Positions 5,881 through 48,510 of a DNA stretch of 64,000 nt are shown piece after piece. The stretch is from Mustelus asterias (lineage: Eukaryota), in NCBI RefSeq assembly GCF_964213995.1, contig NC_135808.1:21638001-21702000 (forward strand), read 5' to 3'. Position numbers and translations under genes: made by a program. Each line of letters begins with the position of its first letter. The first letter of the stretch is position 1. The notes under the pieces are model-generated. The model saw only the letters and a program-made list of their open reading frames with translations. It searched no databases and was not told where the DNA came from.

Positions 5881-8800
5881 TCCCGGTGTCTGGTGCAAGT
5901 GAGGCTCGGAACAGGGAGATTCTACAGTTGAACGCGTGGCTAAAGGACTGGTGCAAGAGGGAGGGTTTTAAATTCATAGATAACTGGGAAATCTTCAAGA
6001 CAGAATGGCAACTTTACAGAAAGGATGGGTTACACCTTAACTGGAAGGGAGCAAATATCCTGGCTGGGAGTTTTGCTAGAGTGTTTCGGCAGGATTGAAA
6101 CTAGTGTGGCAAGGGGGTGGGGAACAAAACAGTAGGTCAGTAAATACTGAGGCTGGGGTTGAGCTGGGGGCCAGGGCAAGGCTAGCTAAGAAGAGGAGCA
6201 CTCTGGAGGAGGAGGACCTGACTGGGCCTGGAGGTCTGGAGTGCATCTGCTTCAATGCGAGGAGCGTAACGGGTAAAACAGCCGAACTTAGGGCCTTAAT
6301 GCTTATGTGGAATTTGGATGTGGTTGCGGTGACGGAAACTTGGTTAAAAGAAGGACAGGACTGGCAGCTGAATATTCCGGGGTATAAGTGTTTTAGGCGA
6401 GACAGAGGAGGGGCTAAAAAAGGTGGGGGAGTAGCGATATTCGTTAAGGAGCATATTACCGCGATGCAGAGGGTAGACAACTTGGAGGGGTCATGTACTG
6501 AGTCGCTGTGGGTGGAACTCAGAAACAGGAAGGGTGCAGTCACTATGCTGGGGGTGTACTACAGACCACCCAACAGCCCACGGGAAGTGGAGGAAAGGAT
6601 ATGTCAGGAGATTCTGGATAGGTGCAGAAAAAATAGGGTTGTTGTAGTGGGGGACTTTAATTTCCCTGGCACAGACTGGAAAGTGCTTAGAGCTGGGGGT
6701 CCGGACGGGGAGGAATTTGTAAAATGCGTACTGGAAGGTTCTTTGGAACAGTATGTAGATAGCCCGACTAGAGAGGGGGCTATACTGGACCTAGTTCTGG
6801 GAAATGAGCCCGGTCAGGTCGTCAAAGTTTCGGTAGGGGAACATGTGGCAAATAGTGACCACAACTCTGTTAACTTTAGGATAGTAATGGACAAGGATGA
6901 GTGCTGTCCTACGGGCAGGGTGCTAAATTGGAGGAAGGCTGACTATAGCCGGATTAGGCAGGAATTGGTGGATGTTGATTGGGAGAGGATGTTCGAGGGT
7001 AAGTCCGCGTCTGGCATGTGGGAGTCTTTTAAGGAACTATTGATAAGGCTGCAGGATAGGCATGTGCCTGTCAAAAGGAAAGATAGGAAAGGTAGGATTC
7101 GAGAGCCGTGGATAACCAGGGAAATTGAGGATCTGATTAAAATGAAAAGGGAGGCGTACGTTAAGTCCAGGCAACTGAAAACAGATGGAGCTCTGGAGGA
7201 ATACAGAGAGAGTAGGAAAGAACTCAAACGGGGAGTTAGAAGGGCAAAAAGAGGTCACGAGATGTTCTTGGCAGGCAGGATTAAGGAGAATCCTAAGGCA
7301 GACTATTCATACGTTAGGAACAAAAGAGTTGTCAGGGAGAAAATCGGACCTCTCAGGGACAAAGGAGGGGAATTATGCTTAGAACCCAAGGGAATAGGGG
7401 AGATCCTAAATGAATACTTTGCATCGGTATTCACGAAGGAGAGGGGCGTGTTAACCGGGAGTGTCTCGGAGGGAGGTGTTGACCCGTTAGAGAAAATCTC
7501 CATTACAAGAGAGGAAGTGTTAGGTTTTTTAGGGAACATTAAAACTGACAAAGCCCCAGGGCCTGATGGCATCTATCCTCGACTGCTCAGGGAGGCGAGA
7601 GATGAAATTGCTGGGCCTCTGACGGAAATCTTTGTCGCTTCTTTGGACACGGGTGAGGTCCCTGAGGATTGGAGGATAGCGAATGTGGTCCCGTTGTTTA
7701 AGAAGGGTAGCAGGGAAAACCCAGGAAATTATAGGCCGGTGAGCTTGACGTCCGTGGTAGGGAAGTTGTTGGAGAGGATTCTTAGAGACAGGATGTATGT
7801 GCATTTAGAACGGAACAATCTCATTAATGACAGACAGCATGGTTTTGTAAGAGGGAGGTCGTGCCTTACAAATTTGGTGGAGTTTGTTGAGGAAGTGACA
7901 AAAATGGTTGATGAAGGAAGGGCCGTAGATGTTGTCTATATGGATTTCAGTAAGGCATTTGACAAATTCCCACATGGCAGGTTGGTTAAGAAGGTTAAGG
8001 CTCATGGGATACAAGGAGAAGTGGCTAGATGGGTGGAGAACTGGCTTGACCATAGGAGACAGAGGGTAGTGGTCAAAGGGTCTTTTTCCAGCTGGAGCTC
8101 TGTGACCAGTGGTGTTCCGCAGGGCTCTGTACTGGGGCCTCTGCTATTTGTGATATATATAAATGATTTGGAAGAAGGTGTAACTGGTGTAATCAGCAAG
8201 TTTGCGGATGACACGAAGATGGCTGGACTTGCGGATAGCGAAGAGCATTGTCGGGCAATACAGCAGGATATAGATAGGCTGGAAAATTGGGCGGAGAGGT
8301 GGCAGATGGAGTTTAATCGGATAAATGCGAAGTGATGCATTTTGGAAGAAATAATGTAGGGAGGAGTTATACAATAAATGGCAGAGTCATCAGGAGTATA
8401 GAAACACAGAGGGACCTAGGTGTGCAAGTCCACAAATCCTTGAAGGTGGCAACACAGGTGGAGAAGGTGGTGAAGAAGGCATATGGTATGCTTGCCTTTA
8501 TAGGACGGGGTATAGAGTATAAAAGCTGGAATCTGATGATGCAGCTGTATAGAACGCTGGTTAGGCCACATTTGGAGTACTGCGTCCAGTTCTGGTCGCC
8601 GCACTACCAGAAGGACGTGGAGGCGTTAGAGAGAGTGCAGAGAAGGTTTACCAGGATGTTGCCTGGTATGGAGAGTCTTAGCTATGAGGAGAGATTGGGT
8701 AAACTGGGGTTGTTCTCCTTGGAAAGACGGAGAATGAGGGGAGATCTAATAGAGGTGTACAAGATTATGAAGGGTATAGATAGGGTGAACAGTGGGAAGC

Positions 8801-9108
8801 TTTTTCCCAGGTCGGAGGTGACGATCACGAGGGGTCACGGGCTCAAGGTGAGAGGGGCGAAGTATAACTCAGATATCAGAGGGTCGTTTTTTACACAGAG
8901 GGTGGTGGGGGCCTGGAATGCGCTGCCAAGTAGGGTGGTGGAGGCAGGCACGCTGACATCGTTTAAGACTTACCTGGATAGTCACATGAGCAGCCTGGGA
9001 ATGGAGGGATACAAACGATTGGTCTAGTTGGACCAAGGAGCGGCACAGGCTTGGAGGGCCGAAGGGCCTGTTTCCTGTGCTGTACTGTTCTTTGTTCTTT
9101 GTTCTTTT
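5878..9108 (+). mobile_element. Young 5'-truncated CR1 LINE: end of ORF1 (SGNH esterase-like) and nearly intact ORF2 (APE endonuclease + RT)
   Basis: ORF1 tail DGLHLNWKG (5886-6098); ORF2 6095-8335 and 8332-9027 with VAVTETW, GDFNFP, SDHN, GVPQGSVLGP, FADD; one 1-nt deletion near 8318; (TTTGTTC)n tail. Confidence 0.96.
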
Positions 9109-9560
9109 GCTGTTGCTGGAAGATCATCAACTCGGTGAAAGACACTCTTTGGTCTGCCCGAATCTTGTTTATCTTCCAGTACAAGCCCTTCCAGCCCTTG
9201 ACTGAGTGCAGATGGGCACATTCCAAAGCTCAGGACTATGTGCTGAGGGACGCACTAAAGCTTGGGGCAGCTGCTGCAGAGGCGCAATGGGGAAGGTCGC
9301 TGTCTAAGACCTTTCAACCACCATGAACTGAGGGGAGCAGAACCTGCTCGGGCTGAATCACTCACTGAATGTACACAGTGAATATTTCATGTATCTCAGT
9401 TGTACTGAAGCACCTCAGAGTGCAACTTGTTCCATGTAGACAACCTTTAAAAATAACTTTGCAACATTTATAAGACCACTGTGAAATGTTTGAACCATTT
9501 CCTTTACTGTACTGAAGCATCTCAGAACGTTCCTTGATGTACGCAAAGAGCCTGAATATT
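9108..9560 (+). mobile_element. Tx1-type LINE 3' end, continuation of 5326-5880
   Basis: CCWKIINSVKDTLWSAR..QDYVLRDALKLGAAAAEAQWG continues the TNIC sequence broken at 5880. Confidence 0.7.
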
Positions 9561-9598
9561 ATTGCTTTTTGTGTGATGGTCATTTTGGAATGACCTCA

Positions 9599-9780
9599 TT
9601 CACCGAGTTGATGATCTTCCAGCAACAGCAAAAGAACAAAGAACAAAGAACAGTACAGCACAGGAAACAGGCCCTTCGGCCCTCCAAGCCTGTGCCGCTC
9701 CTTGGTCCAACTAGACCAATCGTTTTTATCCCTCCATTCCCAGGCTGCTCATGTGACTATCCAGGTAAGTCTTAAACGAT
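9599..9780 (-). repeat. 182-bp inverted duplicate of 8958-9139
   Basis: Reverse complement matches the CR1 tail plus adjoining Tx1 flank; one mismatch seen. Confidence 0.92.
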
Positions 9781-10552
9781 AAGGGAGGGGTGGGTGGGGG
9801 TGGGTTGACAGGACAGAGTGCCCAAGAGGTTGTTTAATTTGTAGGAGAATGGGGATGATGCCAGATTTTTGTTAAAAAGCCGATTACGGAACAGGAAAAG
9901 AGAAAACCACTTACAATATCAGCTAACATTGAAAGCAGGAAGGGACTCAGCCTGTGTACATCTGAGCAGCCTGCAGTCTGAGATGCTGGTCTTTGACATC
10001 TTGTGCTTTCTTACACCGGGTTTGATCTTCAGATGTGAGGATTACAGAATTGGGCTAATGGAGGTGGAGGGAAGCCAGCTCCATAATTGCAGGGAAATGG
10101 GGCAGCATCAGAAATTTTGTAACATAGACTGAAATACTTGGGGAATGGAAATGGAGTCCACTCAGGAAGCAGGCTGGGGAGGTATAGCTATGAGAGCCAG
10201 TGGGTTTACAGTAGAGATTGCAGAACTACCTAATCCCTGAAATGGAGGTAGAGAAGTCTCGGAGGGGAAGAGTTAATGGTGGGTCATATGGAGAGGAGGG
10301 CAGTGTGAAATTTATTGGAAAGGGATTCACATTTATTTCCTCCCAGTTCTGCTTGAAATAAGAAAATGGAATGAACACCATTATCAATCAAAACTGGTGG
10401 CATAAACTTGAACTTGTCTTTCCAGATTAACTGAGGAGACTTGATACAAAGCAATGATTTCACCCTGCAAAGCTGTGATCTTTCTATCAGATATAATGGC
10501 AGGAGTGGAGTGTATGTGGATCTCCAGAAGCCTGTTCAATTAGACAACCTCC

Positions 10553-10735
10553 TGGCACAGTGGTTAGCACTGCTGCCTCCCAGCTCCAAGGACCTGGGTT
10601 CGATTCCCGGCTTGGGTCACTGTCTGTTTGGAGTTTGCACATTCTCCCCGTGTCTGCGTGGGTCCCCTCCGGGTGCTCCAGTTTCCTCCCACAGTCCAAA
10701 GATGTGCGGGTTAGGTTGATTGGTGATGCTAAATT
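10553..10735 (+). mobile_element. HE1/V-SINE, 3'-truncated
   Basis: Head and V-domain present, tail absent. Confidence 0.85.
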
Positions 10736-10745
10736 TATTCAATTA

Positions 10746-11045
10746 CCAGGGGGCATAGGTTTAAGGTGCGAGGGGTAAGGTTTAAAGGAGATGTACGAGG
10801 CAAGTTTTTTTTTACACAGAGGGTGGTGAGTGCCTGGAACTCGTTGCCGGAGGAGGCAGTGGAAGCGGATATGGTAGTGACTTTTAAGTGACGTCTTGAC
10901 AAGTACATGAATAGGATGGGAATAGAAGGATATGGTCCCCGGAAGGGTAAGGGGTTTTTGTTAAGTCGGGCAGCATGGTCGGTGCAGGCTTGGAGGGCTG
11001 AAGGGCCTGTTCCTGTGCTGTAATTTTCTTTGTTCTTTGTTCTTT
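10746..11045 (+). mobile_element. CR1 3' fragment
   Basis: TRGHRFKVRG..FFTQRVV-type sequence and (TTTGTTC)n tail; same subfamily as 54290-56614. Confidence 0.85.
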
Positions 11046-11063
11046 ATCCCAATATTCAAGGGG

Positions 11064-11428
11064 AAGGTGATGGCCTAATGGTATCACTAGACTATTAATC
11101 CAGAAACTCAGCTCATGTCCTGGGGAGCCGGGTCCGAATCCCGCCACGGCAGATGGTGGAATTTAAATTCAATAAATAAAAAATATGGGATTAAGAATCT
11201 ACTGATGGCCATGAAACCATTGTCAATTTTCATTAAAACCCATCTGGTTCACTAATGTCCTTTAAGGAAGGAAATCTGCCATCCTTACCTGGTCTGGCCT
11301 ACATGTGACTCCAGGGCCACAGCAATGTGGCTGACTCTCAACTGCCCTCTGAGCAAGGGTAACTAGGCATGGGCAATAAATGGTGGCCAGCCAGTGACGC
11401 CCATGTCCCACGAATGAATTAAAAAAAA
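11064..11428 (+). mobile_element. tRNA-derived SINE with L2-like 3' tail
   Basis: tRNA-like head (TGGCCTAATGG..GGGTCCGAATCCC); last ~75 nt match the tail of the LINE fragment ending at 39240. Confidence 0.8.
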
Positions 11429-12569
11429 TTCACACTGAGGTCAATACATCTGAACTTAGCGACAGGAACGCTGCACGGGAGGCAGGAATGGGATCCCAGT
11501 GAGTCAGGATTTCCAATTCCAGCCCAGAGCCAGTCAGCCCGTTCAACTGTACTCCTTCTGCTATTTCCACCAACCCCAGTGAGGGAGAGACTGCAGCAGG
11601 GAATTATTCTTGAATGAAACCAAACTCACCAATCCCAAATGGGGGCCCGCTGATTGTATCAATGGGCAAGGGTGAACCAGGTTGGTCGGGAAGTAAGATC
11701 CTGTAGTCAGTCATGTGAGAAACCATCTGAGTTTGAGGGAGATGGGGTTGAATAAAATTTATGCCCAAGACTGGAGCAAAGACATTGACAGAAATATAAA
11801 TGGGAATCTGGAATGCATCAGGGAACGCAGCGGGAAGAAATTAATTTGTGCTGGAGGGAAGCAGGAGCAGCATGAAGCAGTGGATGAGAAAACTGCACTT
11901 GAAAACATCAGAAAGATAAGGAGAGAGATATGGAGAGAGATCTATCAGGGGCAGACCCACAGTGCCAAAATTAATTGAATAAATTCTTCAAACATCTTCC
12001 AGGCATTTCATGTTGAAACGGGGGAGTTAATTGAGGAAGTTATGAAAGACCAAAACAGCTACAGATTTACAATCATTGAAAGAAGCAATGCACATTCGCC
12101 AGGTCATAAAATCAAACCAAGCACTGAGGTACATTCCTAAAGGACAAGAATTGAAAATCAGGGAGATTATATTAAACCTACGTAGAGAATTGGATATACA
12201 AGAACCAATGCATTGTGTACAGTCCTGGTCTGCACATTAAATTAACACAAAGGGGTAACATCTGTTACATTTTTAACCATCAGAACTGAGAGATTTTAAC
12301 TATCTGGACAGAAGGAACAGGTTGGAATAATTTCCTTAGAAAAGGATGATAGGGAGATCCAACAGAGGTTGTGATGGGCTTTGGCAGGTTTGACTTGGAG
12401 CATATATTTCCAGTTGGTGGGCCCTTAAAAATACTGATTGTCGATATAAGATCATCAATAATAAATCCAGAATGGCATTCTTTAATCAGAGAATGATTAG
12501 AACGTGCATCTTTAGGGTTGTTAAGATGAATAGTTCGGATTAATTTAAAGGTAAGGTCATGATTTTATT

Positions 12570-14082: not shown

Positions 14083-17000
14083 TATTCAGCATAATCTTAT
14101 ATTGGAGCTAGATTATTGGTGGACGTGACTGTGCATGAGACAACAGTGATGGTGGCAGAGAATAGAAATCAGTGGGGAAAGATTGTTCAGAGTTACAGCC
14201 AACCCTCGGAGTGATTTAAGACAAGACAATTGGAACAATGTTAGGAAGCAATTCATCCTCATAACATTTAAGAAGAATTTAGATGGGCACTTGCACACAG
14301 GGCTATGGACGAAGTGTTGGAAAATAAGATTAGGTTGGTTGGATGCTTGATGGCCAGCACGGTCGCAATGGGCTGAAGAGCCTCTTTCTGTGCTATAAAA
14401 CTCTATGACGCCAGTAAATCAGTGACACACCTACAAAAAGCAATTTTGCAGCTCGACTAAACGAATATGTCAAAAAGTAAGGCAGTAGATTTAAGTTTGG
14501 TAGGTTATCAAGGTTCATAGAAGCAAGTTGGGAAGATGACATAAGATAAAGATCAGTCATGATCTTACTGTCTTGAGAAGCAGGATCCATGGTCCACCTT
14601 TTCACTGGTTAGCTGCCTGGCCAGGAGGGAAATGTTATGTTTATTAGACTCTCCGAGGGAGAAATTCCCTTGAACAGCATGACTTTGTTTCAGGGAGGAG
14701 GGAGGTGGGGCGGGGGAGGCGGGGGGGGGGGGGGGGGGGGGGGCTGCGGGGTGGGTGAGGCCTGCTGCTGCCCCCTCCGTCCCCTCCTCCCCCCCCCGGG
14801 TGCAGTTTGGAGGCCATAGGGGTGGGAAGGAGCACTGAGACACACTGTTGAAAAGGTTTGCTTTGTTCTCCAAGCCTTCCTCCCAGTTGTTTGCTTATAT
14901 TTTAGGTCCTCTAGCTCTCACCCCTCAAACCTTCCCAGTCGCCATGTCTCACACATGCCAGCCCATGTTACATCATGCCTCCCAACAGCCCCAATAGCTT
15001 CTCATACCCTCCATTTCAACTCATGGTTCCCACTCACTGCACTGGCCCCTCAGAAACAACTTTTGCTCTCTTTCTGACAAAGGTATTTGCCAGTAACCAT
15101 GAAGAGAGCCCAACTTTGTGATGTACGTGGCTTGTCCTCCTTTTTACACACTATCCTCCAACCTTGGAATTGGGTATGAGACAGATTCAGTCACTGTGTT
15201 GACCTTTTGATAAGCTATGCAGAATCCTTGAGTACCATCAGATTTGGGAACCAAAATGATCGGCGAACTCCACTCGCTTTAATTTGGTTCTATAATGCCT
15301 TCTTGCAGCATTGCTTCAACTTACTTTTGAACCTGCGCTGCTTTGAGAGGATTAAGCCAGTAGGGGTGTTGTTTTATTGGAACAGCATTCCCTATGTCAA
15401 CCTCATGTACTCTGGCATTAGTCCTCCCCACTCTATTTCCACATAGGTCTTCATAACACTGTAACAAGCTTTTCAAGCCAGGGCTCTGATCTTGGGACAG
15501 AGAGCTCACTACTTTAACACAGTCTTGAAGGACTTCTTCGTTATTTAATTTATTTTGAGGTACATCAAAATCCACATCATCAGAATTGGATTCCTCTCTC
15601 TGAGTGGCAGTAACTCATGCTTGTTCCTCTGATTCCCTTTCCCTGTCATAATATGGCTTCAACATGTTCACATGACATTGCCGATAATTTTTTTCCTATC
15701 TGGCATCTTTATCAGATAATTCATCTTGACTTAACTGCTTCTCAATCTGATAGGGACTACTAAGTCTTGCTTTAAGGGACATTCAACCATTGGTAATGGC
15801 ACCAGTACCTTATCCTCGTGGGAAAATGAACAAAATTTAGATTTCTTATCTGCTTCTTGCTTCGGTAGGTGTGCCACCTTCAAATGTTGTTTCACTAATT
15901 CACCTACTCTGTTTAGTCTTTCTCTCACCTCAGATACATAATCCAACTGTGAGATCTCTGACTTCCGACCCACCAACTTTTCCTTAATTAATTTTAAATG
16001 TCCTCTTGCTTCGTGTCCGAATAGCAACTCAAATGGGGTAAAACTGAGTCGATACATTTGGAGCATCTCTAATAGCAAATAATACAAATGGGAAACCTTC
16101 ATCCCAATCAGTTGGGTAATCCTGGCAATACGTCCTCAACATGATATTTAGGATCTAATGCCACCTTTCCAATGATCCCTGGGATTCAGGATGGTGTGCA
16201 CTTGAGGTAAAGTGCTTGATGCCTAAACTATCCATGACTTCCTTAAATAATTTGGCAGTAAAATTGGTATGGCTGAGTTTCCCTGGATAATTCCTAATGG
16301 GTAAAGAAAGAAAGCAACTCCTCCACAACCTTTTTTGCCTTGATATTCAGTATCCAGTGGAAACTTGGGAGACACATCTATTATGGTTAGCAAGTACTGG
16401 TTTCCACTTTTGGTTTTAGGGAGGGGATCTGCACAATCAATTATACCTCGTGTAATAGGTTCTTCAAATGTGGGAATTGGCATCAAAGATGCTGGTTTTG
16501 TCACTGCCTGTGGCTGTCCTACCATCTGACATGTATGACTGGTACGGCAAAATTCCACCACATCTTTCTGTAATCCAGGCCAATAAAAATGCTCCTGTGT
16601 CTTAGCCTGAGTCTTCCTCACTCCTTGATGCCCTGCTACAGGTAATTTGTGTGCTACCCGTAATACATCCTGTCTGCATTCTACCCGCAACACAATCTGG
16701 TGAACTTCTGCCCATTCCTCAGTTGCACTAACCTGCCAAGTTCTCCATTTCCACCTGAAAATGTTATTCTTAAGGTAATAGCATTCTGAAATACACTCTG
16801 ATTCCTTTCCCGAGTAAGCTTTGTGATATAAATCCTTTATCGTCTCATCTTTCTGTTGTAATTCCATTAATCTTTCAGATCTAAACCACCTCTCCTGATC
16901 CTCTACCTGCATAGGTTTTTCCTTTGCAATCTCATCAGAGTATCAGCTAACTGGACCTCAACTCCTTTATCTTTCTCTGTTGTTCTCCCTTCCTGTTTCA

Positions 17001-42289: not shown

Positions 42290-42420
42290 CTGAAATAGAG
42301 AGAGAGAGAATTCAGGATAGACACCCTAAAAACACCATCACCCTCACACACACACACACACACACAGAGATCAGGGCATGAACCCCAAAACACTGATTCC
42401 AAACCGAGAGCAAGATCTCC

Positions 42421-42840
42421 ACCCAGCCTGGCATTGCCCCTCTCACACCCCATCACTCACTGACCCAGGGTTAATGCCCCAGTCCCCAGCCTGGCATTGC
42501 CCCTCTCACACCCCATCACTCACTGACCCAGGGTTAATGCCCCAGTACCCAGCCTGGCATTGCCCCTCTCACACCCCATCACTCACTGACCCAGGGTTAA
42601 TGCCCCAGTACCCAGCCTGGCATTGCCCCTCTCACACCCCATCACTCACTGACCCAGGGTTAATGCCCCAGTACCCAGTCTGGCATTGCCCCTCTCACAC
42701 CCCATCACTCACTGACCCAGGGTTAATGCCCCAGTACCCAGCCTGGCATTGCCCCTCTCACACCCCATCACTCACTGACCCAGGGTTAATGCCCCAGTAC
42801 CCAGCGTGGCATTGCCCCTCTCACATCCCATCACTCTGAC
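42421..42840. repeat. 63-bp minisatellite, about 6.6 near-identical copies
   Basis: Unit CCAGCCTGGCATTGCCCCTCTCACACCCCATCACTCACTGACCCAGGGTTAATGCCCCAGTAC. Confidence 0.95.
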
Positions 42841-43370
42841 CACCCACCAGCTTAACGAACTCCCTGAAAATAAAGAAAGGGGAAGTTTGGGGGAAAAAGT
42901 CATCTTGGCAGTTGGAAAAACTGGGTCGTATTGAATCGACCGCCCAGTATTCATTGTGCGGCTTTTAATGACCCAGACACGGTGGGCTGACTGCGCTATT
43001 TGTTGTCTGTGGTCGTTTGGGCCGAGTAGCAACCAGGACTTTTAGCTGTTCCTGGCAATGCAGCATCGCCCCTTTTAAATGATCAGGCAAGGTAAATAGG
43101 GGCCAATTTAATTACACTCACACATTCCTGTTTCCATGTTTATTCTTCCAGAAAAGGAGTTGATGGGTTCAATTTGCATTTTTCACTATTTTTCTTGCCA
43201 TTGAAGTCAATGTTAAAAAAAGAGGGGCAAAATCATAAGATGGTTGCACTGAAACGATGGCGCAAAGTTCAAATCTCCAAAAATAAATTAGTTACAGAGG
43301 GATTTTTTTAAATTTCCTGGAATCACGTCTACTTGAAACATATTTACAGAAGAAAGGCATTTACCCTATT

Positions 43371-43664
43371 TGTGGTGAACCATCGTTGGTTCACCACTGG
43401 GGTTGTTATTGTGTTACTGTTGGGCTAGGGTGTTGTTGTTATGGGGGTTGTACTATGTTGTTGGGTTAGGGTGTTTACCTGTCCTAAGTGTTATCATGGC
43501 ACACTCCAGTGGGGTCCCGCCTCCGGTGGCAGGGTATAAGACCCCCTGCTCCGGCAGGACCCCTTCAGTCTGAACGGGTGAATTTGTGTTAGTAGTTTCA
43601 TTGTTAATGTATTAAAGCCTTCAGTTCTAAAGCCTTGTTTCCGGGTGCTCATTGAGGTGCATCA
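43371..43664 (+). repeat. 5' LTR
   Basis: TGTGGTG..GCATCA; TATAAG at 43535, Inr-like TCAGTC at 43565, ATTAAA at 43611. Confidence 0.97.
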
Positions 43665-43686
43665 ATTTAATACATTAACTGAGAAT

Positions 43687-46600
43687 ATGGAACAGATCCT
43701 AAAACCGGATCGTCTGACACTGGACCCACGTGCGGTCGGTGCAGCTAACACGTTCGAACATTGGTGGAAGTGCTTCGAGGACTACCTGGCAGCCTCGGTA
43801 GCTATCACTACAGACAGTGATAGACTCCAGGTCCTCCACGCAAGGGTAAGCGACACGATTTACCTAGCCATTCGTGCAGCTTCCACTTACCAGGGTGCCG
43901 TCGAGCTCCTAAAGAATAGGTACATTACGCCACCCAACGAGATTCACGCTCGTTATCTCCTCGCTACACGACGTCGGCAGTCGGGCGAGACCATAGAAGA
44001 CTACGCCAATGAACTCCTGCAGCTTGCCAGGGGTTGTGACTGTAAGGATGTCTCCGCCGAGCAGTACATGCAAGACCTCGCCCGAGACGCGTTCGTAGCA
44101 GGGGTAGGGTCCTCGTACATCAGACTTAAATTATTAGAAAAGGGGAAACTCAACTTGACCCAGGCAATGGGGATGGCCGTGAGGTTGGAGGCGGCGTCGA
44201 AGAGCTTGGCGCTGTACCCCGAGGACCACGTGCAGTCAACGTGGTTGGAGCAAGCTCTGCTCCCTCCTCGCCCCGCGAACCCGCGCTCCCAGATCGATTC
44301 GACGACGGCGGCAGCTCCAGGTGGCCAGCGATGCTATTTTTGCGGTGGGGCCAAGCATCCACGGCAACAGTGTCCGGCAAGAACGGCAATCTGCAGCCAG
44401 TGCGGTAAAAAAGGCCACTACGGCAAAGTCTGCAGGTCCAAACCTAAAAACGGCAGTGCAGCTTGTAACCCTCCAGAACGGAGACCATCTCTTTCGGCGC
44501 TGCAGTACCCACGAGGTCCGACCACGTGCGATCTCAGGACGGCGCCATCGTGGCAGACAGAGGAGGAGGAAGACCACCAGGAGTCGCTGCGCTTGGAGCC
44601 CTCGGCCACATGCGATTCATGGGGGCGGCCATCATGGTCCACGACGACTAGGAGCGACCAGCAGGGGTCCTCAGCATCCACATCGGCAGCATGCAGCAGC
44701 GACCAGCAGGGGTCCTCAGCATCCACATCGGCAGCATGCAGCAGCGACCAGCAGGGGTCCTCAGCATCCACATCGGCAGCATGCAGCAGCGACCAGCAGG
44801 GGTCCTCAGCATCCACATCGGCAGCATGCAGTGACGCCCAGGGGCCAACGGTGGCGTCGATCTCTCTGGATCAGACCAGGCATTACAGACTGGAACATTC
44901 CATGATGGAGGTAAAGGTTAGTGGCAGAACTGTAAATTGTCTGTTTGACAGTGGGAGCACCGAAAGTTTCATACACCCTGAAACTGCTAAAAGGTGTGGA
45001 CTCCGGGTTCTCCCTGCCAAACAGACAATTTCCATGGCATCACAGTCCCGGTCTGTACCGATCCAAGGACGATGTATGGTAACTCTTGAGGTACAGGGCA
45101 CAGTTTACGAGCAATACAGGCTCCTTGTGCTACCTCACCTTTGCGCGCCACTTCTCCTCGGACTAAACTTTATGGCCCACATGAGGAGTGTGATCCTACA
45201 GTACGGTGGGCCACTCCCTTCACTGGCAGTAGGGAACCAGCCGCAGCCTCCAAATTGCCCAAAGCGCCCCGCGTGCAATCTATCCACCCTGAAGATCACG
45301 ACACCATCCCTTTTTAAAAATCTGGTACCTGGCTGCAAGCCCATCGCTACTAAAAGTAGGCGTTACAGCGCTGAGGACCGGATCTTTATTAGATCTGAGG
45401 TTCAGCGGCTCCTCAAGGAAGGGATCATACAGGCCAGTGCTAGTCCGTGGAGAGCGCAGGTCGTGGTAGTCAAAAGCGGGAACAAACCTCGGATGGTCAT
45501 CGACTATAGTCAGACCATTAATAGATACACGCAGCTGGATGCGTATCCTCTCCCGCGCATTTCTGATATGGTCAATCAGATTGCGCAGTACCGAGTGTTT
45601 TCTACCATAGACCTTAAGTCCGCCTACCATCAACTCCCCATCCGCCCAGAGGACCGACAATATACGGCTTTTGAGGCGGATGGTCGTCTATACCAATTCC
45701 TCAGGGTTCCATTTGGTGTCACCAATGGGGTCTCGGTCTTCCAGCGTGCTATGGACCGAATGGTGGACCAGAACGGGTTGCGGGCTACCTTCCCGTACCT
45801 GGATAACGTCACCATCTGCGGCCATGACCAGCAGGACCACGACACGAATCTCCAACACTTTCTACGCACTGCATCTCGCCTGAATCTGACCTATAACAGG
45901 GAGAAGTGCGTATTCCGTACGCGTAGGTTAGCCATCCTCGGATACGTGGTGGAAAACGGGGTCATTGGCCCTGATCCAGACCGTATGCGCCCACTCACTG
46001 AACTTCCCTTGCCCGCTAGCACGAAAGCACTGAGGAGATGCCTCGGGTTCTTTTCGTATTATGCACAGTGGGTCCCCAACTACGCGGACAAAGCTCGTCC
46101 GCTCATTAAGTCCACGACCTTCCCACTTACGCCGGAGGCCCAATTGGCCTTCAAGGTTTTGAAAAGCGACATCTCGAAAGCCACGATGCACGCGGTGGAT
46201 GAATCCATCCCTTTCCAGGTGGAGAGTGATGCATCGGACTTCGCCCTAGCCGCCACACTAAACCAGGCAGGCAGGCCCGTCGCGTTTTTTTCCCGCACCC
46301 TTCAAGGCCCAGAGATTCGGCACTCAGCGGTGGAAAAGGAGGCTCAGGCCATTGTGGAGGCAGTCAGACACTGGCGCCATTACCTGGCAGGTAAGCGGTT
46401 CACCCTGATCACGGATCAACGATCCGTGGCGTTTATGTTCAGTAACACGCAGAGGGGCAAGATCAAGAACGATAAGATCTTGCGGTGGAGAATTGAGCTC
46501 TCCACCTATAATTACGATATTATGTATCGTCCAGGGAAGCTCAATGAGCCCTCGGATGCCCTCTCGCGCGGAACATGCGCCATCATGCAGGAGGACCGCT

Positions 46601-47814
46601 TGAAGGCTCTCCACAATGATCTGTGTCATCCTGGAGTCACCAGACTCTACCACTTCATAAAAGCCCGCAACCTACCCTACTCGGTGGAGGAGGTCAGGTC
46701 AGTTACTAGAAGTTGTCGGATTTGCGCAGAATGCAAACCACACTTTTATCGACCAGACCGGGCACATTTGGTCAAGGCCACTCGCCCTTTTGAGAGGCTG
46801 AGTGTAGATTTTAAGGGCCCCCTTCCCTCAACGGATCGGAATGTCTATTTTCTTAACATAATAGACGAATTTTCCCGGTTTCCGTTTGTTTTCCCCTGTG
46901 CGGACACGTCGAATTCCACCGTCATCAAGGCATTCAGTGAGCTTTTTACCCTGTTCGGGTACCCCTGCTATATTCATAGCGACAGGGGCTCGTCGTTCAT
47001 GAGCAACGACTTGAGGCAATTCCTGCTCTCATTCGGGATTGCCTCTAGTAGAACCACGAGCTACAACCCTAGGGGTAACGGACAGGTGGAAAGGGAGAAT
47101 GCTACAGTCTGGAAGGCTGTCCTACTGGCACTGAAATCCAAGGGCCTTCCAGTCTCCTGGTGGCAGGAGGTCCTTCCAACTGCGCTCCATTCTATCCGCT
47201 CCCTCCTGTGTACGGCAACCAATGCTACTCCCCACGAGAGGATGTTCTCATTCCCTCGGAAGTCGTCCTCGGGGACCTCATTGCCAGCCTGGTTGACGTA
47301 CCCAGGACCCGTCCTTCTGCGGCGCCATGTGAGGGCTCGCAAGTCCGACCCCTTGGTCGAACCGGTCCAACTCCTCCACGCCAACCCTCAGTATGCCTAT
47401 GTGGCATATCCTGACGGGCGAGAGGACACTGTCTCCATTAGAGACCTGGCGCCCGCAGGGGACGTAGCAACTCCTGTCGCTCCTATTCCCCCAGTCACAG
47501 ATCCACTACTCCTCATTACTTCCCCAGACGTGGCGCGGTCAGCACCGGGACCAGTGCATAACACTTTTACTCCCATGTACAGCTTGCCTGAGACTCGGAG
47601 ATCGGCGCCACCATCATCACCACCACCACCACCACCAAACGTTCCAGGATCCCCTACACCATCGCCTCATCAGGGCCGGCCGGCCCGGGAGTCTTTGAGG
47701 GGACAGCCAGATGTTGCTTTGAGAGAGCCACCGCAAGCACCTGCTCCGGTTTCGCAACCGGTGTTGAGAAGATCGCAGCGTCGGTGTGGTCCTCCAGACC
47801 GTCTGGACTTGTGA
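43687..47814 (+). CDS. Gag-Pol polyprotein (1375 aa from first ATG): gag with two CCHC knuckles, aspartic protease, RT, RNase H, integrase
   Basis: CYFCGGAKHPRQQC, CSQCGKKGHYGKVC, LFDSGST, IDLKSAYHQ..VPFGV..YLDN, ESDASD, HNDLCH..CRIC, VDFKGP..HSDRG..VERE. Confidence 0.96.
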   Translation: MEQILKPDRLTLDPRAVGAANTFEHWWKCFEDYLAASVAITTDSDRLQVLHARVSDTIYLAIRAASTYQGAVELLKNRYITPPNEIHARYLLATRRRQSGETIEDYANELLQLARGCDCKDVSAEQYMQDLARDAFVAGVGSSYIRLKLLEKGKLNLTQAMGMAVRLEAASKSLALYPEDHVQSTWLEQALLPPRPANPRSQIDSTTAAAPGGQRCYFCGGAKHPRQQCPARTAICSQCGKKGHYGKVCRSKPKNGSAACNPPERRPSLSALQYPRGPTTCDLRTAPSWQTEEEEDHQESLRLEPSATCDSWGRPSWSTTTRSDQQGSSASTSAACSSDQQGSSASTSAACSSDQQGSSASTSAACSSDQQGSSASTSAACSDAQGPTVASISLDQTRHYRLEHSMMEVKVSGRTVNCLFDSGSTESFIHPETAKRCGLRVLPAKQTISMASQSRSVPIQGRCMVTLEVQGTVYEQYRLLVLPHLCAPLLLGLNFMAHMRSVILQYGGPLPSLAVGNQPQPPNCPKRPACNLSTLKITTPSLFKNLVPGCKPIATKSRRYSAEDRIFIRSEVQRLLKEGIIQASASPWRAQVVVVKSGNKPRMVIDYSQTINRYTQLDAYPLPRISDMVNQIAQYRVFSTIDLKSAYHQLPIRPEDRQYTAFEADGRLYQFLRVPFGVTNGVSVFQRAMDRMVDQNGLRATFPYLDNVTICGHDQQDHDTNLQHFLRTASRLNLTYNREKCVFRTRRLAILGYVVENGVIGPDPDRMRPLTELPLPASTKALRRCLGFFSYYAQWVPNYADKARPLIKSTTFPLTPEAQLAFKVLKSDISKATMHAVDESIPFQVESDASDFALAATLNQAGRPVAFFSRTLQGPEIRHSAVEKEAQAIVEAVRHWRHYLAGKRFTLITDQRSVAFMFSNTQRGKIKNDKILRWRIELSTYNYDIMYRPGKLNEPSDALSRGTCAIMQEDRLKALHNDLCHPGVTRLYHFIKARNLPYSVEEVRSVTRSCRICAECKPHFYRPDRAHLVKATRPFERLSVDFKGPLPSTDRNVYFLNIIDEFSRFPFVFPCADTSNSTVIKAFSELFTLFGYPCYIHSDRGSSFMSNDLRQFLLSFGIASSRTTSYNPRGNGQVERENATVWKAVLLALKSKGLPVSWWQEVLPTALHSIRSLLCTATNATPHERMFSFPRKSSSGTSLPAWLTYPGPVLLRRHVRARKSDPLVEPVQLLHANPQYAYVAYPDGREDTVSIRDLAPAGDVATPVAPIPPVTDPLLLITSPDVARSAPGPVHNTFTPMYSLPETRRSAPPSSPPPPPPNVPGSPTPSPHQGRPARESLRGQPDVALREPPQAPAPVSQPVLRRSQRRCGPPDRLDL
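44653..44832 (+). repeat. In-frame 45-bp tandem repeat x4 between gag and protease
   Basis: Encodes (SDQQGSSASTSAACS)4. Confidence 0.95.
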
Positions 47815-47886
47815 ATCCTGTTATTTTTTTTGTCATTGTCTGTTTTCATCCACCCCGCCACCTTTGGTTCCTAAAGGAGGGGTGAA

Positions 47887-48180
47887 TGTGGTGAACCATC
47901 GTTGGTTCACCACTGGGGTTGTTATTGTGTTACTGTTGGGCTAGGGTGTTGTTGTTATGGGGGTTGTACTATGTTGTTGGGTTAGGGTGTTTACCTGTCC
48001 TAAGTGTTATCATGGCACACTCCAGTGGGGTCCCGCCTCCGGTGGCAGGGTATAAGACCCCCTGCTCCGGCAGGACCCCTTCAGTCTGAACGGGTGAATT
48101 TGTGTTAGTAGTTTCATTGTTAATGTATTAAAGCCTTCAGTTCTAAAGCCTTGTTTCCGGGTGCTCATTGAGGTGCATCA
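47887..48180 (+). repeat. 3' LTR
   Basis: Same sequence as 43371-43664; preceded by AAAGGAGGGGTGAA. Confidence 0.97.
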
Positions 48181-48510
48181 CTATTTGAAGCAGTAAAATT
48201 GTGCAACTCTTATCTCAACTCATTGCTCTGGATCCTGGGGCTGTAAATCAGTGAAGCTGCCCTCATTCCCCTGTTATTACCCCACCCGGAACTGCGCAGA
48301 ATGATGTGAGCATGCGCAAACTGATGCCTGTGATCCCACCTTTCTCCCATTGGGGGCGCTGTTGAGGCACTTTCACAAACTGCAGACAATTGGCCCAAAC
48401 ATGCTGATTATTATTTCACTGTGAGCTGCTTGGTCGCCCCATTGAACCCCTTCAAAGATTTGCGTCCTGTTGCCTGAGTTTCACACTACTAACTAGCATT
48501 GTGATTACCT

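What the first reader, a model, noticed from the sequence alone, without database searches (positions are those of the whole stretch)
43603..43679. Candidate tRNA-independent self-priming: the PBS position is complementary to the element's own LTR
Seen: there is no TGG-type tRNA PBS after the 5' LTR. Instead TTTAATACATTAAC (43666-43679, 1 nt after the LTR end) is the exact 14-nt reverse complement of GTTAATGTATTAAA (43603-43616) inside the LTR, and that segment ends precisely with the ATTAAA poly(A) hexamer. The 3' end of the LTR segment would point into U5 as a primer should. Known: fission-yeast Tf1 self-primes using the first 11 nt of its RNA after a cleavage. Inference: this element folds back and is cut after 43616 to prime minus-strand synthesis; unlike Tf1 the primer seems internal (about 37 nt past the TATA/Inr-predicted start), and the same duplex would mask the 5' LTR poly(A) signal, coupling priming to suppression of premature polyadenylation. 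Related self-priming animal Gypsy groups may already be catalogued.
Basis: partly seen in the sequence, partly recalled or inferred. Interest (0 to 1): 0.85.

Follow-up and report, generated by a model that had tools for sequence, protein, structure and literature searches.

The report
Gypsy retrotransposon that probably primes itself
An intact jumping gene in this vertebrate genome lacks the usual tRNA docking site; the stretch in its place pairs with the element's own terminal repeat, and distant relatives keep that pairing through matching changes, which suggests the element primes its own copying as the yeast element Tf1 does.

Summary
Window 43371-48180 is an intact Ty3/gypsy element: identical 294-nt LTRs, CTATT target duplication, one gag-pol ORF. 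The 14 nt at 43666-43679, one base after the 5' LTR, are the exact reverse complement of 43603-43616 inside the LTR, which ends in ATTAAA.

The pairing is not chance. 33 of 36 related loci from public contigs (43-68% polyprotein identity) carry a perfect 11-19-nt complement in the same place, with different sequences. On 27 non-redundant elements RNAalifold recovers this helix, with compensatory changes at 11 of 13 pairs. 92.1% of cells pair, against 65.3% in shuffles and 32-48% when slid. A host tRNA could not produce that pattern.

Tf1-like self-priming is the best reading (about 0.7), but cleavage and priming are inferred. Poly(A)-signal masking is plausible: 15 of 27 arms end in AATAAA or ATTAAA.

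The clade lacks a chromodomain and fits 'Mag C/SURL'-type LTRs, not Tf1/sushi. I found no open-access paper reporting self-priming for it. First-stage notes of this scan record the same pattern elsewhere in this genome.

The parts
43366..43370 (+). Target-site duplication CTATT (5' copy); the 3' copy is at 48181-48185
   Evidence: Read directly.
43371..43664 (+). 5' LTR, 294 nt, TG...CA ends; near-palindrome at its start (about 43372-43397)
   Evidence: 100% identical to 47887-48180; inverted self-match 92% over 26 nt.
43535..43540 (+). TATAAG, TATA-like motif in the LTR
   Evidence: Sequence only. No RNA data. Not conserved at a fixed distance in relatives.
43565..43570 (+). TCAGTC initiator-like motif; its A at 43567 lies 32 nt after the TATA T and is the motif-predicted start
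   Evidence: Sequence only. The motif consensus is recalled, not tested.
43603..43616 (+). Arm 1, the proposed self-primer: GTTAATGTATTAAA, ending in ATTAAA (43611-43616); proposed cut between A43616 and G43617
   Evidence: Exact reverse complement of 43666-43679. The homologous arm in relatives covaries with their PBS. 25 of 27 arms end in A, followed mostly by GCC or ACC.
43617..43665 (+). 49-nt loop: rest of R, U5 and a 1-nt spacer (A43665). It starts with a stem-loop directly after the proposed cut, and the likely poly(A) site lies inside it
   Evidence: MFE folds. In 23 of 27 relatives the loop-only fold starts a stem within its first 4 nt. The poly(A) site position is inference.
43666..43679 (+). 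Arm 2, the primer-binding site for the element's own RNA: TTTAATACATTAAC
   Evidence: Same position (LTR end CA plus 1-2 nt) in relatives.
43687..47814 (+). Single gag-pol ORF, 1375 aa, uninterrupted: CCHC finger, protease, RT, RNase H, integrase; no chromodomain hit
   Evidence: ORF; Pfam: PF13975 408-497, PF00078 596-754, PF17917 840-941, PF00665 1032-1128. Best solved-structure match is Ty3 Gag-Pol, E 1.1e-61.
47873..47886 (+). Polypurine tract AAAGGAGGGGTGAA, abutting the 3' LTR
   Evidence: the same arrangement is seen in relatives.
47887..48180 (+). 3' LTR; its copy of arm 1 is at 48119-48132, with no complementary partner downstream
   Evidence: The fold of the 3' context is not better than shuffles (z -0.28).

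Best explanation
The 14 nt after the 5' LTR (43666-43679) are a primer-binding site for the element's own RNA, not for a tRNA. In the genomic RNA, the LTR segment 43603-43616 folds back over a 49-nt loop and pairs with this site. The element's RNase H then cuts the RNA at the 3' end of that segment, between the conserved AAA and the following GCC. The new 3'-OH at A43616 primes minus-strand DNA synthesis into U5. This is the mechanism shown for fission-yeast Tf1.

Shown here:
- the exact complementarity and its correct polarity;
- the absence of a tRNA-type site;
- conservation of the pairing by compensatory change across a wide clade;
- a conserved stem-loop that starts at the proposed cut.

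Inferred: the cut, the priming, the transcription start and the poly(A) site.

Probable side effect, also inferred: in the 5' copy the helix hides the ATTAAA signal, whereas the 3' copy has no partner. A further inference is that the PBS is re-copied from the primer in every cycle. That would explain why close copies differ by exactly matched changes.
For: 1. Exact 14-nt complement at the PBS position; only these sites match in 64 kb; 0 of 300 local shuffles reach it.
2. The arms pair in the MFE fold of the 5' leader: -38.1 kcal/mol, z -2.89; -24.5 kcal/mol, z -3.37, 38% of the ensemble.
3. 33 of 36 related loci with a usable 5' region have a perfect 11-19-nt complement in the same geometry: arm 1 ending in AAA then RCC, a loop of 25-79 nt, and arm 2 starting 1-2 nt after the LTR's CA. 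Four more were seen by eye (L015, L016, L027, L074).
4. On 27 non-redundant elements RNAalifold predicts just this 13-bp helix, with both-side changes at 11 of 13 pairs.
5. For 16 pairs, 92.1% of cells pair against 65.3% shuffled (0 of 500), there are 106 double-change cells against 30.7, and slid controls give 32-48%.
6. 24 of 27 elements have 13 of 13 Watson-Crick pairs with their own arm, against a mean of 8.0 for other elements' arms; there are 25 distinct arm sequences; none of the 27 PBS arms starts with TGG.
7. L002 and L009 are 98.2% identical over 4.2 kb yet differ by one compensated pair.
8. The whole space between LTR and gag ATG is only 22 nt here, and in seven loci the arm ends within 2 nt of the ATG or overlaps it. 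That leaves no room for another PBS.
9. Self-priming by a 5' LTR segment complementary to the PBS is established for Tf1 and proposed for Tf2 and Tj1 and for elements 'from fungi to vertebrates' (passages read in PMC4600332 and PMC5341516).
Against: - There is no experimental or RNA evidence. The only runs holding the element are contigs of unknown, DNA-like kind; no molecule starts or ends were reported.
- The TATA/Inr motifs predict a start at 43567, 36 nt before the arm. That departs from Tf1, where the primer is the very 5' end of the mRNA. A 36-nt unpaired 5' tail on the primer would complicate plus-strand transfer (my reasoning).
- After the cut only about 15 nt of R would remain for the first strand transfer, assuming a poly(A) site about 15 nt after ATTAAA.
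- Covariation proves a conserved helix, not its use as a primer. The same helix could serve poly(A) control, translation control or packaging.
- 3 of 36 loci lacked the helix: L035 and L036 (distant) and L054 (decayed). A second copy in L078 also lacked it.
- The relatives are not independent samples of evolution, and shuffle controls overstate significance for related sequences, as the tool itself notes.
Confidence: 0.7

Rival explanations
1. The helix is a regulatory RNA structure only, and priming uses some other, unidentified primer. Possible roles: hiding the 5' copy of the poly(A) signal, controlling gag translation (arm 2 ends 7 nt before the ATG), or genome packaging and dimerisation.
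For: 15 of 27 arms end in AATAAA or ATTAAA. The arm has no partner in the 3' LTR context, where the fold is unremarkable (z -0.28). In L006, L008 and L019 arm 2 overlaps the first base of the start codon. Covariation alone cannot tell a regulatory helix from a priming helix.
Against: No alternative PBS exists: only 22 nt separate the LTR from the ATG here, the helix fills them, and there is no TGG-type site. 12 of 27 arms lack a canonical hexamer, yet the helix, the terminal AAA and the position 1-2 nt after the LTR's CA are still kept. The helix sits exactly where a PBS must be, with the polarity a primer needs. A compensated change between 98.2%-identical copies is easier to explain by copying the PBS from the primer than by two independent mutations.
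Confidence: 0.15
2. This is classic Tf1-type self-priming with a 5'-terminal primer. Transcription really starts at or within a few nt of 43603 (for example at the TCATTG at 43598-43603), so nothing is 'internal' and the TATA/Inr at 43535/43567 is not the promoter in use. This is a sub-case of the best explanation; it differs only on the start site.
For: Complementarity stops sharply at 43603 (T opposite T at 43602/43680). In relatives pairing drops from 93% or more (positions 1-13) to about 67% at positions 14-16. L007 and L041, two separate copies, share an uncompensated mismatch at helix position 14, as expected if only about 13 nt are copied from the primer. Relatives have LTRs of only about 130-250 nt with the arm about 100 nt from the LTR start and no TATA at a fixed distance. 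In Tf1 the primer is the 5' end of the mRNA (PMC4600332, passages).
Against: In the window a well-spaced TATAAG plus TCAGTC pair predicts a start 36 nt upstream. There is no TATA about 30 nt before 43603. No RNA data exist either way.
Confidence: 0.35
3. The complementarity is a chance match or a leftover of LTR/leader sequence history without function.
For: Both arms are A/T-rich, which raises background pairing; arms of different elements still make 8.0 of 13 pairs on average.
Against: 0 of 100 and 0 of 300 shuffles reach the match. The helix is kept through compensatory changes at 11 of 13 pairs in 27 elements with 25 distinct arm sequences.
Confidence: 0.01

Closest known systems
Tf1, Tf2 and Tj1 of fission yeasts (self-primed reverse transcription)
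   Same: No tRNA PBS. The site just after the 5' LTR is complementary to a segment of the 5' LTR transcript. The primer's 3' end faces U5. A stem-loop lies next to the duplex. Tf1 was reported to need a U5-IR-like stem-loop; I saw only that paper's title, in the reference list of PMC4600332. Here a stem starts at the proposed cut in 23 of 27 elements.
   Different: In Tf1 the primer is the first nucleotides of the mRNA (11 nt, recalled). Here motifs predict it lies at +37 to +50, which is untested. The arm here ends in the poly(A) hexamer and a conserved AAA|RCC junction. The loop is only 25-79 nt. The element lacks a chromodomain and sits in a metazoan clade.
Tf1/sushi group of vertebrate chromoviruses (sushi-ichi and relatives)
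   Same: Vertebrate Ty3/gypsy elements for which self-priming has been proposed, as cited in PMC6317226 and PMC4600332. The primary paper (Butler et al. 2001) is not held and was not read.
   Different: No chromodomain here, and none in any of the 120 listed homologues. LTRs are 294 nt here and about 130-250 nt in relatives, against a mean of 572 nt for the Sushi LTR model in PMC3601003 (Table 1). Phylogenetic placement was not tested.
Mag lineage, 'Mag C' clade containing SURL (sea urchin); Jule of Xiphophorus
   Same: A metazoan clade that includes vertebrates. Short LTRs: the Mag C training mean is 174 nt. LTR ends TGTNATRT...AYANAACA (PMC3601003, Tables 1 and 3) resemble TGTTGTGA...CTACAACA of the relatives. 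Size is about 4-5 kb with one or two ORFs.
   Different: Mosquito Mag-lineage elements are reported with tRNA-Leu or tRNA-Ser PBSs (PMC3286476, Table 1 and text). I found no statement on the PBS of Mag C or SURL elements. The assignment rests on LTR features only; no named reference proteins could be fetched for a tree.
Occlusion of the 5' poly(A) signal by RNA structure in retroviruses (HIV-1 poly(A) hairpin; recalled, not looked up)
   Same: The R-region poly(A) hexamer is base-paired in the 5' leader, and a context difference between the 5' and 3' copies decides its use.
   Different: Here the partner strand is the PBS itself, which exists only downstream of the 5' LTR. One helix would therefore serve both priming and masking. 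This is untested.
Predicted self-priming in plant Tcn1 chromoviruses and TAR Ty1/copia elements
   Same: Prediction from sequence of a PBS complementary to the element's own LTR, in lineages outside fission yeast (PMC6317226, passages).
   Different: Different superfamily or clade and different hosts. No link to the poly(A) hexamer is described in the passages read; that paper's Additional files 1 and 5 were not seen.

Membership tests
Ty3/gypsy (Metaviridae) LTR retrotransposon | LTRs with TG...CA ends, a target duplication, a PPT, and pol order PR-RT-RH-IN | tested here: met
   (LTRs, CTATT duplication, PPT). (Pfam order PR 408-497, RT 596-754, RH 815-941, IN 968-1128). (best solved-structure match is Ty3 Gag-Pol, E 1.1e-61).
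Self-priming LTR retrotransposons (Tf1-type mechanism) | No tRNA-complementary PBS (TGG...) next to the 5' LTR | tested here: met
   None of the 27 PBS arms starts with TGG. A direct comparison with host tRNAs was not possible.
Self-priming LTR retrotransposons (Tf1-type mechanism) | The sequence immediately after the 5' LTR is complementary to a segment of the 5' LTR, with the primer's 3' end facing U5 | tested here: met
   14 of 14 nt. Conserved with compensatory changes in relatives.
Self-priming LTR retrotransposons (Tf1-type mechanism) | The complementary segment is the 5' end of the mRNA | not testable with these tools
   No RNA run holds the element and contigs show no starts. Motifs predict a start 36 nt upstream. 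The sharp end of the complementarity and the data from relatives point the other way.
Self-priming LTR retrotransposons (Tf1-type mechanism) | RNase H-dependent cleavage of the RNA at the end of the duplex creates the primer | not testable with these tools
   An RNase H domain is present and the AAA|RCC junction is conserved. Cleavage itself needs an experiment.
Self-priming LTR retrotransposons (Tf1-type mechanism) | An additional stem-loop next to the primer/PBS duplex (U5-IR-like) | tested here: inconclusive
   A stem starts within 4 nt after arm 1 in 23 of 27 loop-only folds. These are single-sequence folds; no covariation test was made, and equivalence to the Tf1 structure was not examined.
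Tf1/sushi group (chromoviruses) | Chromodomain at the integrase C-terminus | tested here: not met
   No PF00385 hit at E up to 0.01. None appears in the precomputed Pfam lists of the 120 listed homologues.
Tf1/sushi group (chromoviruses) | Phylogenetic placement of RT/IN with Tf1 and sushi-ichi | not tested
Mag C / SURL clade of the Mag lineage | Short LTRs (about 174 nt) with ends TGTNATRT...AYANAACA; metazoan hosts including vertebrates | tested here: inconclusive
   Relatives have LTRs of about 130-250 nt ending ...CTACAACA...CATAACA or ...TTACAACA and starting TGTTGTG, TGTCGTA or TGATGTG, compared with PMC3601003 Tables 1 and 3. The window's own LTR (294 nt, TGTGGTGA...GTGCATCA) fits less well. 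No tree was built.

The most novel reading that the evidence does not exclude
A large non-chromoviral Ty3/gypsy clade of animals, from invertebrate-derived contigs to this vertebrate, replicates without any tRNA. An R-region segment that ends in the poly(A) hexamer is cut at a conserved AAA|RCC junction next to a small hairpin, and it primes at the site 1-2 nt after the LTR. In the vertebrate branch the primer would be internal (+37 to +50 of the RNA) rather than 5'-terminal as in Tf1. The same helix would hide the 5' poly(A) signal, so one structure would switch the RNA between mRNA and template use. The PBS would be re-copied from the primer each cycle, which would drive the perfect co-change of the two arms.
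Probability: 0.3. Interest if true: 0.75.

Novelty: new variant of a known kind. Interest (0 to 1): 0.55.

Why it matters
Self-priming is demonstrated experimentally only in fission-yeast elements and is otherwise predicted for their chromoviral kin and some plant elements. If it holds here, then:

- tRNA-independent priming would be the rule in a separate, very widespread animal Gypsy clade that is hugely amplified in this genome;
- such elements would escape tRNA-fragment-based host control (PMC7472051, abstract only);
- annotation pipelines that look for tRNA PBSs would miss or mis-score them;
- the sharp, covarying 13-14-bp helix would give a simple sequence diagnostic for the clade;
- the link of the primer to the poly(A) hexamer would offer a testable model of how a short LTR solves the 5'/3' poly(A) problem.

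Tried and rejected
RNA evidence for the start site. The look-up of sequencing runs (kind rna) listed 4 runs of one study, none on record as RNA. Read laying laid only contigs and reported no molecule starts or ends. Among the 40 best-supported differences none fell in either 14-mer (289 more rows were not shown), and one contig showed an extra A behind 43676. The start site, the poly(A) site and within-genome covariation therefore stayed untested.

Host tRNA comparison. There are no tRNA genes in the window. Only one tRNA-like gene turned up in 638,248 bases of related loci, and its best complement to the site is 6 nt. The test was uninformative and I rely on the covariation logic instead.

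Other copies in the window. There are none; only this element and one weak RT-like match at 15060-15320.

Rfam. No family matches 43300-43800 at E up to 1.

TATA at a fixed distance from arm 1 in relatives. I looked by eye at 110 nt upstream in 27 elements. There was no consistent motif, so the start cannot be inferred this way.

Poly(A)-tailed contigs among the loci, as a proxy for transcripts. None found.

A first automated arm search missed L012 and L050 because my search windows cut the arm. It was redone with freer limits.

Literature. Six searches of the open-access library found no paper linking SURL or Mag C elements to self-priming or linking a PBS to the poly(A) signal. The primary papers are not held (Levin 1995; Lin and Levin 1997; Atwood-Moore 2006; Springer 1991; Volff 2001), and Butler 2001 has no PMC id. 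This absence of reports is therefore weak. Additional files 1 and 5 of PMC6317226 (PBS types) and supplementary file 3 of PMC13524379 (PBS calls for sponge and echinoderm gag-pol elements) may bear on prior knowledge.

Rejected readings:
- A tRNA PBS hidden in the gag start. The ATGG... sequences differ between elements as codons do, and they lie 17-50 nt from the LTR.
- Priming by the poly(A) tail. The arms beyond AAA covary with the LTR.
Full report
WHAT IS THERE

Window 43371-48180 is a complete, apparently young Ty3/gypsy LTR retrotransposon of 4810 bp.
- The two LTRs (43371-43664 and 47887-48180) are 294 nt long and 100% identical.
- They begin TG and end CA and are flanked by a 5-bp target duplication, CTATT.
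- A polypurine tract, AAAGGAGGGGTGAA, abuts the 3' LTR.
- One uninterrupted ORF (ATG 43687, stop 47814, 1375 aa) encodes a CCHC finger, protease, RT, RNase H and integrase in that order.
- The best solved-structure match is Ty3 Gag-Pol, E 1.1e-61. No chromodomain is detected.
- The closest proteins are unnamed predictions from rays and sharks (Hypanus sabinus, Scyliorhinus canicula, Mobula, Narcine; 73-82% identity).
- Behind them come many sequences at 55-65% from invertebrates and from metagenome contigs.

THE OBSERVATION

- After the LTR's terminal CA (43664) comes one A, then TTTAATACATTAAC (43666-43679), then 7 nt, then the gag ATG.
- GTTAATGTATTAAA at 43603-43616 is its perfect reverse complement and ends in ATTAAA.
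- With up to one mismatch the 14-mer occurs only there and in the 3' LTR copy; 0.01 matches are expected and 0 of 100 shuffles give three.
- In a local test no shuffle of 300 reached 14 nt; the mean longest was 5.7.
- There is no TGG-type tRNA site in the 22 nt between LTR and ATG.
- The polarity is that of a primer: A43616 pairs with T43666, next to U5.
- Folding the leader puts the two arms together in the minimum-energy structure: 43560-43700 gives -38.1 kcal/mol, z -2.89; 43603-43690 gives -24.5 kcal/mol, z -3.37, 38% of the ensemble.

RELATIVES: THE DECISIVE TEST

I therefore aligned 21 polyproteins (A1) and scanned public contigs with that alignment. The scan kept 80 loci from metagenome contigs and 8 from 'bacterial' genome bins that evidently contain eukaryotic contigs. 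A scan of viral contigs gave nothing.

LTR pairs could be drawn in many loci, and the picture was immediately the same. The LTRs are short (about 130-250 nt). The 11-19 nt that follow the LTR's CA plus 1-2 nt are the reverse complement of an LTR segment 25-79 nt upstream. That segment ends in AAA and is followed by GCC or ACC.

An automated search anchored on the gag start or the LTR end found a perfect complement of 11 nt or more in this geometry in 33 of 36 loci (35 of 39 anchor rows). The misses were L035 and L036 (distant family), L054 (a decayed copy with a deletion) and a second copy in L078. Four further loci with short flanks show the pattern by eye (L015, L016, L027, L074).

The sequences of the arms differ from element to element. 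Among 27 non-redundant elements there are 25 distinct arm sequences.

COVARIATION

I aligned 27 elements: the window plus 26 loci, leaving out 7 near-copies (A2).
- RNAalifold on A2 predicts one helix, which is exactly this one: 13 pairs, 11 of them with both-side changes that keep the pair.
- Counting a 16-pair version gives 92.1% of 432 cells paired, against 65.3% in column shuffles (0 of 500 as high).
- There are 106 cells with changes on both sides, against 30.7 in shuffles.
- The covariation score is 0.678 against 0.172.
- Sliding the partner by 1-3 columns drops pairing to 32-48%.
- 24 of 27 elements make 13 of 13 Watson-Crick pairs with their own arm, and the own arm is the best or joint-best partner in 26 of 27. 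Arms of other elements make 8.0 of 13 on average, a high background because the first pairs are always A-U.
- Pairing falls to about 67% at positions 14-16, so the conserved helix is about 13 bp.

Caveat: the elements are related, and shuffle counts are not probabilities. The slid controls and the 25 different arm sequences do not depend on that caveat.

WHAT THIS EXCLUDES

The first was that the complementarity is not conserved in relatives. It is conserved.

The second was a match to a host tRNA, which could not be tested directly. The window has no tRNA gene, and 638 kb of related loci yielded a single tRNA-like gene. A tRNA partner is nevertheless incompatible with the data. A tRNA site would be the same in many elements and would not track each element's own LTR.

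No second candidate site exists. The arm ends within 2 nt of the ATG, or overlaps it, in L006, L007, L008, L009, L012, L019 and L050. The ATGG... sequences vary as codons do.

MECHANISM

The best-supported reading is self-priming of the Tf1 kind. A segment of the 5' LTR transcript folds back on the site after the LTR. The element's RNase H cuts at the 3' end of the segment, here after A43616. The freed 3'-OH then primes minus-strand synthesis. The mechanism is described in passages of PMC4600332 and PMC5341516; the primary Tf1 papers are not held.

Three further observations fit this reading.

(a) The junction at the proposed cut is the most conserved part. Pair 48/135 is A-U in 27 of 27, pair 49/134 in 26 of 27 and pair 50/133 in 25 of 27. 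The next three bases are mostly GCC or ACC.

(b) A small stem-loop (RCCU...AGGY) starts right at the cut. In loop-only folds a stem begins within the first 4 nt in 23 of 27 elements, and the arms pair in the MFE of 26 of 27. Tf1 is reported to need a stem-loop beside its primer duplex; I saw only that paper's title, in a reference list.

(c) L002 and L009 are 98.2% identical over 4.2 kb (44 mismatches), yet they differ by one exactly compensated pair: G to T in the arm of both LTRs, and C to A in the site. If the site is re-copied from the primer during plus-strand synthesis, a single change in the arm spreads to the site. That is an inference, but it explains the perfection of the helix in young copies.

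Conversely, L007 and L041 are two separate copies that share an uncompensated mismatch at helix position 14. This suggests that only about 13 nt are copied.

WHAT REMAINS OPEN

It rests on TATAAG (43535-43540) and TCAGTC (43565-43570, A at 43567), which are indeed well spaced.

I could not test it. No RNA run holds the element. The four runs laid are contigs without molecule ends. No poly(A)-tailed contig is among the loci. Relatives show no TATA at a fixed distance from the arm.

Some evidence favours a terminal primer instead:
- the sharp end of complementarity at 43603;
- the roughly 13-nt co-changing tract;
- the very short LTRs of relatives;
- the difficulty that a 36-nt tail on the primer would create for plus-strand transfer (my reasoning).

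I put the terminal-primer sub-case at about 0.35 and the internal one at about 0.3. Both lie within an overall 0.7 for self-priming; the small remainder is self-priming of another form.

Either way, after the cut only the stretch between 43617 and the poly(A) site would serve the first strand transfer. That is perhaps 15 nt if cleavage follows ATTAAA by about 15 nt, which is an inference.

POLY(A) MASKING

The arm ends in AATAAA (7 elements) or ATTAAA (8), that is 15 of 27. It ends in GTTAAA in 5 and in other hexamers in 7. Some of the latter carry a canonical hexamer in the loop instead; L005 is an example.

In the window's 3' LTR context the arm has no partner and the region folds no better than shuffles (z -0.28). 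Masking of the 5' signal by the priming helix is therefore a reasonable secondary role in most members, including this one. It is not the conserved core of the structure.

COMPARISON WITH WHAT IS KNOWN

Self-priming is shown for Tf1. It is proposed for Tf2, Tj1, other fungal elements, the vertebrate Tf1/sushi group, plant Tcn1 chromoviruses and TAR copia elements (passages in PMC4600332, PMC6934838 and PMC6317226).

This element is not a chromovirus by the chromodomain test. Its relatives' LTR length and ends fit the 'Mag C' clade that contains SURL (PMC3601003, Tables 1 and 3). For mosquito Mag-lineage elements tRNA-Leu or tRNA-Ser sites are reported (PMC3286476). The clade assignment is provisional, because I could obtain no named reference proteins for a tree.

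Six full-text searches found no paper that ties SURL or Mag C elements to self-priming or that describes a PBS complementary to the poly(A)-signal region. The library lacks the older subscription papers and supplements were closed, so prior description cannot be ruled out. Rfam has no matching family.

THE SCAN'S OWN NOTES

A word search returned 12 first-stage notes, 8 of them shown. They describe the same pattern in other Gypsy copies of this genome, one 'with covariation in three copies'. These are unchecked notes on other DNA. They agree with the finding, and they agree, in which 8,096 to 12,144 contigs per run lay on the element at 85% likeness or more. The family is highly repeated, and this window is one instance of a genome-wide feature.

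VERDICT

- The helix is real and conserved by covariation across a wide animal Gypsy clade.
- Self-priming is the most likely function (0.7), but it is inferred.
- The internal-primer and poly(A)-coupling refinements are open.
- Novelty: a new variant of a known kind. The mechanism class is known; the clade, the AAA|RCC cut-site architecture, the overlap with the poly(A) hexamer and the very short loop appear undescribed in what I could search.
- Interest: 0.55.

Noticed in passing
window 43100-43372 (flank of the 5' LTR): In runs X2 and X4 a single-copy-depth contig (depth about 38-43) covers the upstream flank with 5-6 differences. It stops aligning at 43372, two bases into the LTR, with 27 further letters that do not fit the LTR (records 9 and 25). 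The flank after the 3' LTR also starts TG, so this would fit an empty-site allele, meaning an insertion polymorphism. The 27 letters were not shown, and the roughly 2% divergence could also mean a paralogous locus.
   Followed up: no
window 44650-44831 (inside gag): A 45-nt unit repeated about four times in frame (SSDQQGSSASTSAAC x4) between the zinc finger and the protease.
   Followed up: no
window 42358-42924: A minisatellite of 63-nt period, about 9 units of 77-100% identity, lying 450 nt upstream of the element.
   Followed up: no
window 43372-43397 (and 47888-47913): The LTR starts with a near-perfect 26-nt palindrome, GTGGTGAACCATCGTTGGTTCACCAC (inverted self-match 92%). Its function is unknown.
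   Followed up: no
window 47770-47811 (C-terminus of the polyprotein): The last residues (RRSQRRCGPPDRLDL) match a motif kept at the C-terminus across the aligned relatives: the alignment's consensus line ends LRRSxRxRRPPDRL, with R1365 nearly invariant. This may be a tethering or localisation motif in place of a chromodomain.
   Followed up: no
L081-L087 (genome contigs): Contigs filed under bacterial metagenome-assembled genomes (Hyphomicrobiales, Rubritalea, Metamycoplasmataceae, Gammaproteobacteria) carry this animal-type retrotransposon with its LTRs. These are most likely eukaryotic contigs mis-binned into bacterial genomes.
   Followed up: partly
one search hits P0001, P0108, P0017, P0100: Polyproteins 55-65% identical occur in whipworms (Trichuris suis, T. 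muris) and in a sea anemone (Actinostola). The clade spans very distant animal phyla; horizontal transfer against old vertical descent was not examined.
   Followed up: no
window 43474-43484 and relatives (L006, L009, L012, L064): A short motif TTTACCT/TTACCT recurs in the LTRs 20-50 nt upstream of arm 1 in several invertebrate relatives, and about 125 nt upstream in the window. There a GC-rich block with the TATA box lies in between. It may be an ancestral promoter element with a vertebrate-specific insertion.
   Followed up: no
window 15060-15320 (minus strand): A weak RT-like match (30% over 88 aa, E 1e-6) to this element's polyprotein, probably a remnant of another retroelement.
   Followed up: no
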